From assembly GCA_965240325.2 (NCBI GenBank), contig OZ251223.1:1612001-1676000 (forward strand): DNA of 64,000 nucleotides, read 5' to 3'. Shown here one piece after another: positions 13,156-16,398 of the stretch. Both the position numbers and the translations under genes were made by a program. This stretch comes from Rebecca billardiae RCC1528. Lineage: Eukaryota; Protista; Haptophyta. Positions within the stretch are counted from its first letter, which is position 1. Each line of letters opens with the position of its first letter. The notes under the pieces were generated by a model that was not told the DNA's origin, made no database searches, and saw only the letters and a program-made list of their open reading frames with translations.

Positions 13156-13782
13156 CGCGCGCCCTCCGCCGGCGCCGCCTCGCAGCCGGCTGCCGCCGTC
13201 GATGGGCGCGAGACGCTTCGCAAGCTGAGTGAGCCTCATCAGGGCTCGAGGCTTGCGGGAGAGGCCTGGTCAGCACCACTCCGGGAAAGGGAGTAGGACG
13301 GCTCACGGGTACGGTGGGATTTTTCCCGGACCCATCCCCCCCCACCCTTTCCATCGAAGACGCCAGTCTGGTGTGCGCACGGAATTCTGGTTGTCATTTA
13401 CCGCAGCGTGGAACCAAGATCTATCAAGGTCATAATCGAACTGATCGGAAGTCTCGTGCAATACCCGGCTCCATCAGGGCCATCACAGCGCCGAGATTTC
13501 AACGCTCCACCCGGGTCCATATTTTGCTACGGGTTGACGAGCCGGTCACCACTGATGAAGAATCGGATCTTCGCGTCGATCATTCCGGAAGAACAAGCTG
13601 GTAAAAAGTTGGAGAAGATTGTAGCTACCCCAGCTCGGGTCATGTGCCGAGCTTTTGTTCTCAGGTATTCGGGTAGCCACCGAAGGCCGCTGCATCCTCG
13701 AGCGCTTCACGTCACCTCCAACCCGCCGCCAAGAGGCAACACACAGCACATGCTCAGTGCCCCCCAGAGGGGCTCCGCTCGA

Positions 13783-16398
13783 ATGACTTCAGAGGCCACG
13801 CCTCCATCCGCGGCTGACCCGCCCGATTGGGACTCGGGCCCGCCCGAGCTCGACGACGACGATCCGGCTGCGCCCCCCGACGACGACGCGCCGCATTCGC
13901 AACCGCCGGTTGCGGCGCCAACGCTGTCCGCGGAACACGCGGATGGCGCCCAGCGATGGAAAGTGAACGCGGACGCCCGCGCGACGCTCGAGAGCGTGTT
14001 CCTGCAGGAGCCGCTCCCTTCGAAGGAGACGATTCAGCGTCTCGCGTCAGAGCTGAATGTGACCGCGCGCCGGGTGCAGGTCTGGTTCCAGAACCGCCGC
14101 CAGCGCTGCGCGCGCAAGTGGGTGAACAAGCGCTCGTGGCTTCCTCGCGGCGCGCGCGGGCTCAGCCCGCTGCTGCCGCATCCGGCCGCCGCGGCCGCCG
14201 CGGCGGAGGCTGCCGCGCTGGATTCGGCTGGTGGCGGACACTTCCTGCCGCCGCCCGCCGTCGAGATGGGCGCGCGCGAGCCGGCCGGCTGCGGTTCGGA
14301 CCTGCTCTCGCAGCCCGGCGGCTCGGCCGCGGGCGTTGGCAGCGCGGGCGCGGCAGGACTCGGGCCGTCGATGGCGCAGGCCGGTGGTTCGCAGTGCCAG
14401 ATGCTGCTCGAGGCCTCCGCGCCTCACCGCATCATGTGGGCGAGCACCGGCTGGCTCCAGCTCACCGGCTACATGCTCAACCAGGTGCTCGGCAGCACGC
14501 TCGACGTCTTCGCCGGACCGGGGACGGACACTCGCGCGATCAACGGCCTCATGCAGCAGGCGGTCGAGCGCGGGACCGAGGCGTCCTCCGTCGTCTTCCA
14601 CTACACGCAGGCCGGCCACCCTTTCCAGCACATCCTCAAGTTCGAGCTGCTGCGCGACGGCACGCCGCAGCGGTTCCTCCTCGCGTCGTGCGCGCCGCTC
14701 TACCCGCAGGGGCTGTCGGATGTGGTGCGCTCGCCGCTCACCAACGCCGAGCTGATGCGCGCGAGCGCAGGTGCCGGCAGCGGCTTCGACGCGTCCATCG
14801 TCGGAGGCGGCGCACCCGCGCCAAAGGCGGCGGACGCGCGCCCGTCTGAGGCCAAGCTGATGCCGCCGACCGCGACCGGCCGGCTCTCGCCGCCACCGTT
14901 ACGCATCGGCGGCGGCGGCGGCGGCGGGACGCGCCAGCTGCCGCCCGCAGCAGCGGCGCGGACGGCGGCGGGCGCGCTTGACACGAGCTCCGACGCACGC
15001 AGCGGCGTCACGTCGGGAGGCGGCGGCGGCGGCGGCGGCGCCAGCCGGCTCCTCGGCGATGCGGCGACCGGCGGTCTCGGAGCCTCGGGGTTCGAGTCGC
15101 AGCAGATGCACCAGCTCTTCCAGCAGCAGCAGCAGCAGCAGCGGCGGCAAGGACAACACTCGGAACAAGACAACATGAACTCCAACTTCGCCCGCGCCTT
15201 TGCAGCCCAGGTGAACATCGCGAGCGATGCGCGCCCGCGCGCCCGCCCTGCGTGCGACCACCGCCGCCGTCTGGCGCCCTCCGCCACGCTCTCGCTGACT
15301 CGCGCGCCACCCCTTCCGCCGCGTCGCGCCCGCTCGCGTAGCAGCAAGGCAATGTGATTGCAGCACTGGCTGCGACCGACCAGTTCACCGATCAGCAACG
15401 GGCGCAATTCATGATGGTGCGACGCGGGCCCACCCCACCGCGCCCCTCGCGCTGCGCTCTCCCGACGCGCGCCGTGCCGTGCGCGTGCCATCGGGCGCAC
15501 GGGCGCTGACGCCCCCCTGCCCTCTCCCGCGGCCACCGCCACCGCGCAGGCACTGCGCGAGTCCCAGTTGGCGCAGATCTCGCAGATGCAGCAGCAGCAG
15601 CAGCAGCAGATGCGCTTCTCCCAGCTGCAGATGCTGTACCAGCAGCAGGTGCTGCGCACGCAGGAGGAGCAGCAGCAGATCGAGCAGCGCGAGCAGCGGC
15701 AGCGCGAGCAGCAGGAGCAGCAGGAGCAGCAGGAGCAGTGGCGCGCGCAGTCACAGCGCCAGCACACCGCGGCGGTCGGCGGGGGAGGCTGCACGGACTC
15801 GCGCGCCGCGTCGCAGATGGCGGCGCTGCTGGCCGGAGGGGGCTACGCGCCGTCGGCGCAGTCGCTGGCGGCGTTCTCGCAGATCCAGCAGGCCCTCAAC
15901 CGCACGGCGCCACATGGCGCGGGCTTGGGCGCGGCCGCTGGCAACAGCGGCGACCTGGCTGCTGCCGTGCAGCCTGAGCGCGGCGGAGGCGGCGCAGGCG
16001 CAGGTGCAGCACGCGGCGGCGGCGGCGGCGCGGGCCGCAGCGGCGGCGGCGCGGCGAGCTGCGCGCAGGGCTTGCCACACGCTGGGCTCAGCACAGCCAA
16101 GCAGGCTTGTGGGCGCCTGGCGCATGGCGCGTCGGTGGAGGCCATCGGCAAGCACGCCCTCGGCGCCGCAGCTGCGCATGCACCGAGCAGGGGCGTAGGA
16201 GGCGGAGCAGCACCACCGGCCGTGCCGCAGATGCGCCCCGGCGCCGGCGTGCGCGCAGGCGGTGTTCCACTGACGCCGGGCATGATGAAGCGCGGAAACG
16301 GCTCCGGCGCACCGAACGCGCTGCCCGACCTCGACGATGCCTCCGTGTGGTCCTGGCTGAACTCAGATTTGCCCATCGACGTCGAGCTTGGCGGCTGA
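13783..16398 (+). CDS. Homeodomain + PAS (LOV-like) transcription factor with Gln-rich C-terminus; introns about 15211-15341 and 15417-15549
   Basis: Homeodomain RWKVNADARATLESVF...IQRLASELNVTARRVQVWFQNRRQR and PAS IMWASTGWLQLTGY..QVLG...GPGTD...HYTQAGHPF. Two phase-0 introns with CTGAC branch sites link to the poly-Q exon ending at 16398. The start could be 13750. Confidence 0.85.

What the first reader, a model, noticed from the sequence alone, without database searches (positions are those of the whole stretch)
13954..14700. Homeodomain fused to a LOV-like PAS domain that has lost the photoactive cysteine
Seen: a Q50 homeodomain (WFQNRR) followed by a PAS that aligns without gaps to the LOV consensus. 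I.WAS.GW..LTGY...QVLG-STLDVFA-GPGTD matches I.YAS..F..LTGY...EVLG-RNCRFLQ-GP.TD, and HYTQAGHPF matches NYRKDG.PF. The adduct-forming Cys is Leu, and flavin-contact Asn/Gln positions are Thr/Ala/His. Established: aureochromes (bZIP-LOV) are algal one-component light-regulated transcription factors. Inference: an effector-first HD-PAS factor that senses another ligand, or acts as a blind dimer partner of true LOV factors (clock or light circuit).
Basis: partly seen in the sequence, partly recalled or inferred. Interest (0 to 1): 0.72.

Follow-up and report, generated by a model that had tools for sequence, protein, structure and literature searches.

The report
Homeodomain factor with blind LOV-like domain
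A haptophyte-type alga encodes a DNA-binding homeodomain protein with a sensor domain that descends from blue-light (LOV) sensors but has lost nearly every residue that holds the flavin pigment; this protein type was already described in marine plankton surveys, so this is a new, more degenerate member of a known but functionally untested class.

Summary
One open reading frame (13750-15210, +) encodes a Q50 homeodomain (13951-14136), a disordered linker of about 85 residues and a PAS domain (14395-14700). The nearest solved relatives of the PAS domain, by sequence and by predicted fold, are aureochrome and phototropin LOV domains.

The adduct cysteine is Leu. Only 1 of the 9-10 residues used in the literature to define LOV receptors is kept, and both phosphate-binding arginines are gone.

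The gene continues past a 339-nt in-frame intron into a Gln-rich tail that ends in a conserved acidic-hydrophobic motif.

Orthologues with the same layout exist in an MMETSP transcript and in the Pavlovales sp. CCMP2436 genome. Homeodomain-PAS relatives occur in Prymnesium and Calcidiscus.

The class is not new. Thiriet-Rupert 2016 noted homeobox+PAS factors in Tisochrysis lutea. Coesel 2021 described homeobox-LOV proteins of haptophytes in which Cys is replaced by Leu. A 2026 survey confirmed the combination.

The cysteine loss is old and family-wide: Leu, Met, His and Ser replace C450, R467, N492 and Q513 in more than 100 domains.

Most likely this is a transcription activator whose LOV-derived, flavin-free PAS domain mediates dimerisation or partner or ligand control, not photochemistry. 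Function is untested.

No earlier scan note covered this gene type.

The parts
13750..15210 (+). Exon 1 of the gene. The start is the ATG at 13750 or the next in-frame ATG at 13783. It encodes the N-terminal acidic/Pro-rich region, the homeodomain, the linker, the PAS domain and a Gly/Ala-rich stretch.
   Evidence: Single ORF 13408-15357 in frame 1. Third-position GC rises to 0.87-0.97 from about 13950 and is low before 13700. A gene caller on a Logan contig starts the gene at 13783. GT donor at 15211.
13951..14136 (+). Homeodomain: typical 60-residue, non-TALE type with Q50 (WFQNRRQR). It carries the haptophyte-specific 'RW.(V/I)' N-terminal signature.
   Evidence: Pfam PF00046, E 4.6e-15. 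PDB homeodomain hits. AF2 predicts three helices at pLDDT about 95. The signature is shared with 15 haptophyte homeodomain proteins.
14137..14394 (+). Disordered linker of about 85 residues, rich in Ala and Gly. Its first part (KWVNKR..RGARGLSPLLPHP) is conserved among the pavlovophyte orthologues.
   Evidence: AF2 pLDDT below 40 over residues 67-152 of window:13930-14760, with pTM 0.43, so no confident packing between the domains. Conservation with P0001 and L004.
14395..14700 (+). LOV-derived PAS domain with five strands and four helices and no flanking A'alpha or Jalpha helix predicted. The motif GSTLDVFAG replaces GRNCRFLQG.
   Evidence: phmmer against PDB, aureochrome LOV E 2e-11. AF2 core pLDDT above 96. 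Foldseek top 50 all LOV. Residue table.
15211..15549 (+). Predicted intron: GT..AG, 339 nt, in frame. If retained it would end the protein at the TGA at 15355-15357.
   Evidence: GTGAAC donor and CAG acceptor read directly from the sequence. Codon-position GC pattern is lost at 15298-15477. The downstream ORF is in the same frame and its end is conserved in two other species. No RNA reads were available to confirm the splice.
15550..16398 (+). Exon 2: Gln-rich and Gly/Ala-rich C-terminal region, up to the stop codon at 16396-16398.
   Evidence: ORF 15568-16398. GC3 is 1.0 in the Gln-rich part. BLASTP to the second ORF of transcript L001, E 2e-12. No Pfam domain.
16321..16362 (+). Conserved C-terminal acidic-hydrophobic motif LPDLDDASVWSWLN, a candidate activation or partner-docking motif.
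   Evidence: Conserved in L001 (LPDLDDASVWSWLN) and in L004 of Pavlovales sp. CCMP2436 (IDDASVWSWLN). P0158 ends with DDVLTWLNPDD, and prymnesiophyte relatives carry (I)SEMLDLF at the same place.

Best explanation
This is a nuclear gene of a very GC-rich haptophyte, most likely of the Pavlovophyceae. It encodes a sequence-specific transcription factor of about 770 residues.

Layout: an N-terminal Q50 homeodomain, a disordered linker, a LOV-derived PAS domain, a Gln-rich region and a short acidic-hydrophobic C-terminal motif.

It belongs to the homeobox-LOV(Leu) class already reported from haptophytes.

Shown here: both domains are real, confidently folded and in one reading frame. The architecture is conserved across haptophyte classes. 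The PAS descends from LOV domains but keeps only the glycine of the 9-10 residues that define flavin-binding LOV receptors.

Inferred: this PAS does not bind FMN and performs no LOV photochemistry. It acts as a tethered protein-interaction module, either for homodimerisation that gives the homeodomain two-site DNA binding or for docking to a partner. A non-flavin ligand in the remodelled pocket may modulate it. The Gln-rich tail and the acidic motif would supply activation.

Because the linker is disordered and ranges from about 75 to about 485 residues among relatives, control is more likely through oligomeric state or partner binding than through direct helical allostery of the aureochrome type.
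For: - Domains: Pfam homeodomain E 4.6e-15. LOV similarity E 2e-11. AF2 PAS pLDDT 85. Foldseek top 50 all LOV. The two-domain model has both domains at about 95 pLDDT, the linker below 40 and pTM 0.43.
- One gene: a single ORF spans both domains. Codon-position GC pattern supports it. The orthologous MMETSP transcript P0001 has both domains (56% identity over 91% of the region). The Pavlovales sp. CCMP2436 locus has a homeodomain exon, a PAS ORF and the C-terminal motif.
- Family: 13 of 70 Leu-type proteins carry a homeodomain, and it is the only partner domain found. Members come from Prymnesium parvum and Calcidiscus leptoporus. The homeodomain signature is shared.
- Pocket: 9 of 10 conserved LOV residues are replaced, and R467 is Met. 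The residue list is taken from PMC9098866 and bioRxiv 10.1101/2024.02.29.582800.
- Tree: the window groups with P0001, P0011 and P0002 (99/100), inside the Leu-type group and apart from the Cys-type LOVs.
- Literature: the class is described, with Cys replaced by Leu, and its transcripts oscillate over the day.
Against: - No experiment exists for any member, so flavin binding is excluded only by residue logic.
- The wider family keeps Q454 (77%) and N482 (73%). Its replacement residues (Leu, Met, His, Ser) are strongly conserved. This could mean a functional ligand pocket rather than a filled-in one.
- No RNA data for this gene itself could be obtained. The intron and the full-length product are therefore predictions.
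- Dimerisation is inferred from what PAS and LOV domains generally do, not shown here.
Confidence: 0.6

Rival explanations
1. The PAS domain is a sensor for a small molecule that is not FMN, for example a non-phosphorylated flavin or lumichrome-like heterocycle, a metabolite, or a metal or haem-type ligand. Ligand binding would switch the factor on or off.
For: - Across 114 Leu-type domains the positions that touch the flavin ring in LOV are not random. They are fixed to a new set: Leu 100% at C450, His 74% at N492, Ser 69% at Q513, Met 68% at R467 and Trp 91% at window residue 35, while Q454 and N482 are mostly kept (near-invariant columns).
- Loss of both phosphate-binding arginines fits a ligand without phosphate.
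- In the window the pocket positions are His, His, Cys, Met and Asp, residues that often bind metals or haem.
Against: - Buried residues of any PAS core are conserved for packing alone.
- Leu and Met replacements are also what would be expected if the cavity were simply filled.
- The window departs from the family consensus at three of these positions (Q454A, N482H, Ser to Cys). It sits on a long stem branch (1.21 changes per column), which suggests relaxed or changed constraint.
- No ligand can be named from sequence.
Confidence: 0.22
2. It is a true blue-light receptor without cysteine. The PAS would still bind a flavin and signal through light-driven flavin reduction to the neutral semiquinone, as shown for engineered and archaeal Cys-less LOV proteins.
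For: - Coesel 2021 raises exactly this possibility for the Leu-type homeobox, bZIP and EF-hand variants, citing Yee 2015. The paper reports diel transcript oscillation with a morning peak for homeobox-LOV in Prymnesiales and Zygodiscales.
- LOV signalling tolerates loss of the active-site Gln (PMC9098866).
- The fold is an intact LOV-type PAS.
Against: Those precedents keep the rest of the flavin pocket. Here N449, R451, Q454, R467, N482, N492 and Q513 are all replaced, including a charge reversal at the phosphate site (R451D). The domain passes 1 of 9 residues, where published filters demand at least 8 of 9. Diel mRNA rhythm says nothing about photochemistry of the protein.
Confidence: 0.08
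3. It is a 'blind' heterodimer partner. The PAS would pair with the LOV domain of genuine photoreceptors of the same cell and so bring the homeodomain under light control indirectly.
For: - LOV and PAS domains commonly dimerise through their beta-sheets (established knowledge; aureochrome LOV dimers 5a8b and 5dkl are the top structural matches).
- Unchecked notes of this scan report many canonical LOV domains elsewhere in the same genome.
Against: - Nothing in the sequence points to a specific partner.
- The domain is only about 30% identical to Cys-type LOVs and belongs to a separate old clade.
- The noted LOV proteins of this genome are giant channel or RGS arrays and kinases, which are unlikely nuclear partners.
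Confidence: 0.08

Closest known systems
Homeobox-LOV proteins of Haptophyta (Coesel et al. 2021, PNAS, PMC8017926, Fig. 3C clade; confirmed as the 'Homeodomain-LOV' motif in PMC13737086, 2026)
   Same: N-terminal homeobox, C-terminal LOV-like PAS and Cys replaced by Leu in the GXNCRFLQG motif. Haptophyte origin. The PAS groups with these proteins in the tree. The homeodomain 'RW' signature and a C-terminal acidic-hydrophobic motif are shared.
   Different: The window and its three closest relatives form a separate, long-branched, probably pavlovophyte subclade. It has a short linker (about 75-90 residues against 110-485) and a more degenerate pocket. The window also loses Q454 and N482, which most family members keep, and has Cys where they have Ser. 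Its C-terminal motif is DDASVWSWLN rather than SEMLDLF.
Homeobox + PAS transcription factors of Tisochrysis lutea (Thiriet-Rupert et al. 2016, BMC Genomics, PMC4827209)
   Same: The same domain association in a haptophyte. Four copies were reported as an 'undescribed association'.
   Different: That paper gives only the domain combination. It has no LOV relationship, no residue analysis and no function. Those sequences were not compared directly here.
Aureochromes (bZIP-LOV blue-light transcription factors of stramenopiles)
   Same: Effector-first topology: a DNA-binding domain N-terminal to a LOV-type PAS. Aureochrome LOV domains are the nearest solved structures by sequence (E 2e-11) and by fold.
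   Different: - Homeodomain instead of bZIP.
- Haptophyte rather than stramenopile.
- No adduct Cys and no flavin-contact set.
- No predicted A'alpha or Jalpha helices.
- A disordered linker instead of a short helical one.
Cysteine-less LOV receptors that signal by flavin photoreduction (Yee et al. 2015, cited in PMC8017926) and glutamine-deficient LOV receptors (PMC9098866)
   Same: Natural LOV-type domains that lack a residue once thought essential.
   Different: Those proteins keep at least 8 of the 9 other conserved flavin-pocket residues and bind flavin. This one keeps 1.
Non-photoreceptor PAS transcription factors (animal bHLH-PAS; diatom bHLH-PAS RITMO1, mentioned in PMC8017926)
   Same: A DNA-binding domain plus a PAS used for dimerisation, partner choice or ligand binding rather than for light. 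This is the working model proposed here.
   Different: A different DNA-binding domain, a single PAS, and a PAS of clear LOV descent.

Membership tests
LOV photoreceptor domain (flavin-binding, adduct-forming) | PAS fold of LOV type | tested here: met
   AF2 pLDDT 85 with core above 96. Foldseek top 50 PDB hits are all LOV domains, TM 0.65-0.69.
LOV photoreceptor domain (flavin-binding, adduct-forming) | Adduct-forming cysteine in GXNCRFLQG | tested here: not met
   The motif is GSTLDVFAG, so Cys is replaced by Leu.
LOV photoreceptor domain (flavin-binding, adduct-forming) | At least 8 of the 9 conserved residues (G, N, C, R, F, L, Q of the motif plus two Asn), the filter used in PMC9098866 and in bioRxiv 10.1101/2024.02.29.582800 | tested here: not met
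   Only the Gly is kept. The changes are N449T, C450L, R451D, F452V, L453F, Q454A, N482H and N492H, plus Q513C and R467M.
LOV photoreceptor domain (flavin-binding, adduct-forming) | Binds FMN, FAD or riboflavin and shows a blue-light photocycle | not testable with these tools
   Needs recombinant protein and spectroscopy.
Haptophyte homeobox-LOV(Leu) clade (Coesel 2021) | Homeobox on the N-terminal side of a LOV-like domain in one protein | tested here: met
   One ORF. Pfam homeodomain plus LOV-like PAS. The orthologous transcript carries both.
Haptophyte homeobox-LOV(Leu) clade (Coesel 2021) | Cys of the light-sensitive motif replaced by Leu | tested here: met
   Leu at the C450 position. The same holds in 8 homeodomain-bearing relatives. 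The other 4 homeodomain-linked domains counted have Met, Ile or Ala.
Haptophyte homeobox-LOV(Leu) clade (Coesel 2021) | PAS domain groups phylogenetically with the Leu-type domains rather than with Cys-type LOVs | tested here: met
   The window falls in a 50-row Leu-type group (support 84/91, not starred). The 28 Cys-type rows lie on the other side (74/60). There are 104 columns, so deep forks are weak.
Haptophyte homeobox-LOV(Leu) clade (Coesel 2021) | Haptophyte (or photosynthetic stramenopile) origin | tested here: inconclusive
The closest relatives are Pavlovales sp. CCMP2436 (KAJ1629644.1) and an MMETSP transcript. More distant ones are Prymnesium and Calcidiscus. Scan notes call the genome haptophyte-type (unchecked).
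Haptophyte homeobox-LOV(Leu) clade (Coesel 2021) | Diel oscillation of the transcript | not testable with these tools
   No RNA run was listed for this stretch.
Aureochrome | bZIP DNA-binding domain N-terminal to the LOV | tested here: not met
   Pfam finds a homeodomain and no bZIP.
Aureochrome | Photoactive LOV with Cys and the flavin pocket | tested here: not met
   See the residue table.
Typical (non-TALE) Q50 homeodomain | 60-residue three-helix domain above the Pfam threshold, with WFxNRR and Gln at position 50 and no 3-residue TALE insertion | tested here: met
   PF00046 at 55.6 bits against a cut-off of 22.9. The printed alignments to DUX4 homeodomains have no gaps. AF2 predicts three helices. 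WFQNRRQR is read.

The most novel reading that the evidence does not exclude
The Leu-type LOV-like domains of protists, more than 100 in the top hits alone, have a near-invariant replacement pocket: Leu, Met, His, Ser and Trp where LOV has Cys, Arg, Asn, Gln and Phe. This pocket might bind a so far unidentified non-FMN ligand or chromophore. The homeodomain-PAS proteins, this one included, would then be a new class of one-component sensor transcription factors. Haptophytes lack the canonical clock genes.
Probability: 0.15. Interest if true: 0.7.

Novelty: new member of a known kind. Interest (0 to 1): 0.3.

Why it matters
Haptophytes are major ocean primary producers. Coesel 2021 states that they lack the canonical clock components, and it is not known how transcription factors tie into their daily timing.

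Homeobox-LOV proteins were flagged in 2021 as candidates because their transcripts cycle daily, but nobody has tested whether the Leu-type domain binds flavin.

This gene adds three things:
- a genomic, intron-resolved copy from a second haptophyte class;
- evidence that the fusion predates the split of Pavlovophyceae and Prymnesiophyceae;
- a residue-level argument that at least this branch cannot be a conventional flavin photoreceptor.

Together these sharpen the experiment to do. On its own it is a rediscovery of a published class, so its surprise value is modest.

Tried and rejected
- RNA evidence for this locus: the look-up of sequencing runs listed no run. The splice at 15211/15549 and the start codon stay predictions.
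- Paralogues in the window: tblastn and a family HMM over all six frames found only the gene itself. The rest of the genome could not be searched. Scan notes list no other homeodomain-PAS gene.
- Homeodomain-LOV proteins that keep NCRFLQ: none among the 85 Cys-type domains of the 150 best representative proteins. This covers only the top of 941 hits.
- bZIP or EF-hand partners of Leu-type domains (reported by Coesel): none among the 70 proteins scanned.
- Naming the organism: an exact-protein look-up of the upstream gene found only an unnamed Logan contig (ERR14847148).
- Aureochrome membership: rejected, because there is no bZIP, no Cys and the source is not a stramenopile.
- Recent pseudogenisation of a true LOV: rejected, because the Leu state is family-wide and both domains are conserved across species.
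- Interdomain contact: the two-domain AF2 model gave none (pTM 0.43).
- A short retained intron to explain the in-frame TGA in transcript L001: no GT..AG pair that is a multiple of three fits (read). This is left unexplained.
Full report
**What is there**

The window is very GC-rich, 60-79% in 2-kb steps. A single frame-1 ORF runs from 13408 to 15357.

From the ATG at 13750 it encodes a protein with a Pfam Homeodomain at residues 68-119 (E 4.6e-15, 55.6 bits against a cut-off of 22.9). PAS_9 and PAS_4 match only weakly, at residues 225-310 and below the cut-off. The homeodomain has WFQNRRQR, so position 50 is Gln, and it aligns across its length to solved homeodomains.

The PAS stretch (window:14350-14760) is more like LOV domains than the generic Pfam score suggests. 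phmmer against all PDB chains gives aureochrome LOV domains first (6i23, 3ue6; E 2e-11), then phototropin LOV1 and LOV2 and bacterial LOV proteins.

An AlphaFold2 model built on 42 family sequences is confident (mean pLDDT 85, core above 96). It has the five-strand, four-helix PAS topology. Its 50 best Foldseek matches in the PDB are all LOV domains, led by Phaeodactylum aureochrome 1a (E 7e-9, TM 0.67-0.69, 30% identity).

**Gene model**

Codon-position GC shows coding signal (GC3 0.87-0.97) from about 13950. There is none before about 13700, and the signal is lost at 15298-15477.

A GT at 15211 (GTGAAC) and an AG at 15548-15549 bound a 339-nt in-frame intron. The next ORF (to the stop at 16396-16398) is in the same frame, is Gln-rich, and ends with LPDLDDASVWSWLN.

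That tail is conserved in two other species:
- the second ORF of MMETSP transcript contig L001 (BLASTP E 2e-12);
- the Pavlovales sp. CCMP2436 genome.

It is therefore coding and part of this gene. The predicted product has about 770 residues. No RNA run could be listed for the locus, so the splice is a prediction.

**Relatives and taxon**

The word-index search found P0001, a 443-residue MMETSP transcript marked complete. It is 56% identical over 91% of the homeodomain-to-PAS region and has both domains in one ORF. The search also found P0002 and the more distant P0003.

The exhaustive representative search with the PAS alone gave 941 hits at E of 0.001 or better. The closest single-domain hits are P0001, P0011 and P0002.

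P0011 is KAJ1629644.1 of Pavlovales sp. CCMP2436. Its annotated model lacks the homeodomain. The locus, however, has a homeodomain exon just upstream, separated by an intron that falls right after WFQN, and it has the C-terminal motif downstream. The three-part layout is thus conserved in three pavlovophyte-like genomes or transcriptomes.

More distant homeodomain-PAS proteins come from Prymnesium parvum (KAL1525809.1, annotated only as a homeobox protein), a Prymnesium MAG and Calcidiscus leptoporus. Their homeodomains share a distinctive RW.(I/V)...LE.(V)(F/Y)...QVWFQN(R/K)RQR signature with the window's. They end in a comparable acidic-hydrophobic motif, (I)SEMLDLF.

This points to one old fusion that predates the split of the two haptophyte classes. 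That conclusion is an inference.

**The pocket**

The positions conserved in LOV receptors, in AsLOV2 numbering, are G447, N449, C450, R451, F452, L453, Q454, N482, N492 and Q513. The list is taken from the methods of bioRxiv 10.1101/2024.02.29.582800. PMC9098866 gives the same motif and Asn positions in BsYtvA numbering, with the active-site Gln named separately.

Using a plant phototropin LOV2 in alignment A1 as a ruler, the window keeps only G447. The others are T, L, D, V, F, A, H, H and C. The second phosphate-binding Arg (R467; its role is stated from my own knowledge) is Met. Published filters for calling a LOV receptor require at least 8 of 9, and this domain scores 1.

It is therefore LOV-derived but fails membership as a LOV photoreceptor. 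The charge reversal at R451 and the loss of both Asn make canonical FMN binding very unlikely. This is an inference from residues.

**The family**

Among 257 PAS segments from the best 150 proteins, 115 have Leu and 85 have Cys at the adduct position.

The Leu type has its own fixed signature:

| Position (AsLOV2) | Leu-type family |
|---|---|
| C450 | Leu 100% |
| N492 | His 74% |
| Q513 | Ser 69% |
| R467 | Met 68% |
| window residue 35 | Trp 91% |
| Q454 | kept in 77% |
| N482 | kept in 73% |

These columns are near-invariant in alignment A3.

No Cys-type domain in the set is linked to a homeodomain. The homeodomain-linked domains are Leu (8), Met, Ile or Ala. Homeodomain is the only partner domain among 70 Leu-type proteins.

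In an IQ-TREE analysis (86 rows, 104 columns), the window, P0001, P0011 and P0002 form a clade with 99/100 support on a long stem (1.21). The clade lies inside a 50-row Leu-type group (84/91). The 28 Cys-type domains fall on the other side (74/60).

The cysteine loss is therefore old and family-wide, not a recent event in this gene. The window's branch has diverged further than the rest (Q454A, N482H, Ser to Cys).

**Literature**

- Thiriet-Rupert et al. 2016 reported four T. lutea factors with a PAS plus homeobox association (PMC4827209).
- Coesel et al. 2021 described a clade of LOV-domain sequences from haptophytes and photosynthetic stramenopiles with an N-terminal homeobox, bZIP or EF-hand. 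In these the Cys is replaced by Leu. The paper noted diel transcript rhythms, with a morning peak for homeobox-LOV in Prymnesiales and Zygodiscales. It left open whether the proteins respond to light (PMC8017926).
- A 2026 survey confirmed 'Homeodomain-LOV' (PMC13737086).
- I found no paper with an experiment on any member.

The class is thus known, and its function is not.

**How it most likely works**

Shown: two autonomous, well-folded domains joined by a disordered linker. The two-domain AF2 model has a linker pLDDT below 40 and pTM 0.43. Among relatives the linker ranges from about 75 to about 485 residues. No flanking A'alpha or Jalpha helix is predicted.

Inferred: with such a tether, the PAS probably controls the factor through oligomeric state or partner binding rather than by direct allostery. 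The Gln-rich region and the acidic-hydrophobic end look like an activation region.

I rate the flavin-free interaction-module reading at about 0.6. The rivals are a non-flavin ligand sensor at about 0.2, a Cys-less flavin photoreceptor at about 0.1 or less for this copy, and a blind partner of true LOV proteins at about 0.1 or less. Unchecked scan notes say that the same genome holds many canonical LOV domains.

**Verdict**

This is a real, well-supported gene and a new pavlovophyte-type member of a published class. Interest is modest (0.3). The open and testable question is what, if anything, the conserved Leu/Met/His/Ser pocket binds.

**Scope and operator notes**

No reads were laid. No toxin, effector or virus sequence was handled.

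Noticed in passing
L001:1484-1498: In the MMETSP transcript of the closest orthologue, the homeodomain-PAS ORF and the conserved C-terminal ORF are in the same frame and are separated by a single TGA. The TGA lies next to a GTGAAC hexamer identical to the window's intron donor. No GT..AG pair that is a multiple of three explains it. It could be an assembly error, partial splicing or read-through.
   Followed up: partly
L004:3604-5525 (Pavlovales sp. CCMP2436, MU631475.1): The GenBank model KAJ1629644.1 covers only the PAS part. A homeodomain exon lies upstream (3604 to about 3780), with an intron directly after WFQN. The conserved C-terminal motif lies in a downstream ORF in another frame. The public annotation therefore hides the homeodomain-PAS architecture.
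   Followed up: partly
L006:4596-5636 and L007:6001-7041: A common ocean protein of 346 residues (P0013/P0173, seen on dozens of Tara contigs) consists of two tandem Leu-type LOV-like PAS domains and nothing else. Its neighbours (UCH hydrolase, E2F/DP factor) show that it comes from a compact eukaryotic genome. No function is known for it.
   Followed up: partly
window:16823-18736 (-): The downstream neighbour on the minus strand is a divergent cytochrome P450. Only the C-terminal haem-binding part matches Pfam (E 8.5e-9).
   Followed up: no
window:11614-13155 (+): The upstream ORF of 513 residues looks like a multi-pass membrane protein but has no Pfam match. An identical product is called on Logan contig ERR14847148_10742, which also spans the start of the homeodomain-PAS gene.
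   Followed up: partly
window:13300-13720: A stretch of lower GC lies between the two genes, immediately upstream of the homeodomain-PAS start codon. It is probably the promoter and 5' UTR.
   Followed up: no
same genome, other pieces (scan note s1-365573): Another first-reader note reports a homeodomain fused to tandem GAF-like sensor domains in this genome. Homeodomain-plus-sensor fusions may be a recurring theme in this alga. I did not examine it.
   Followed up: no
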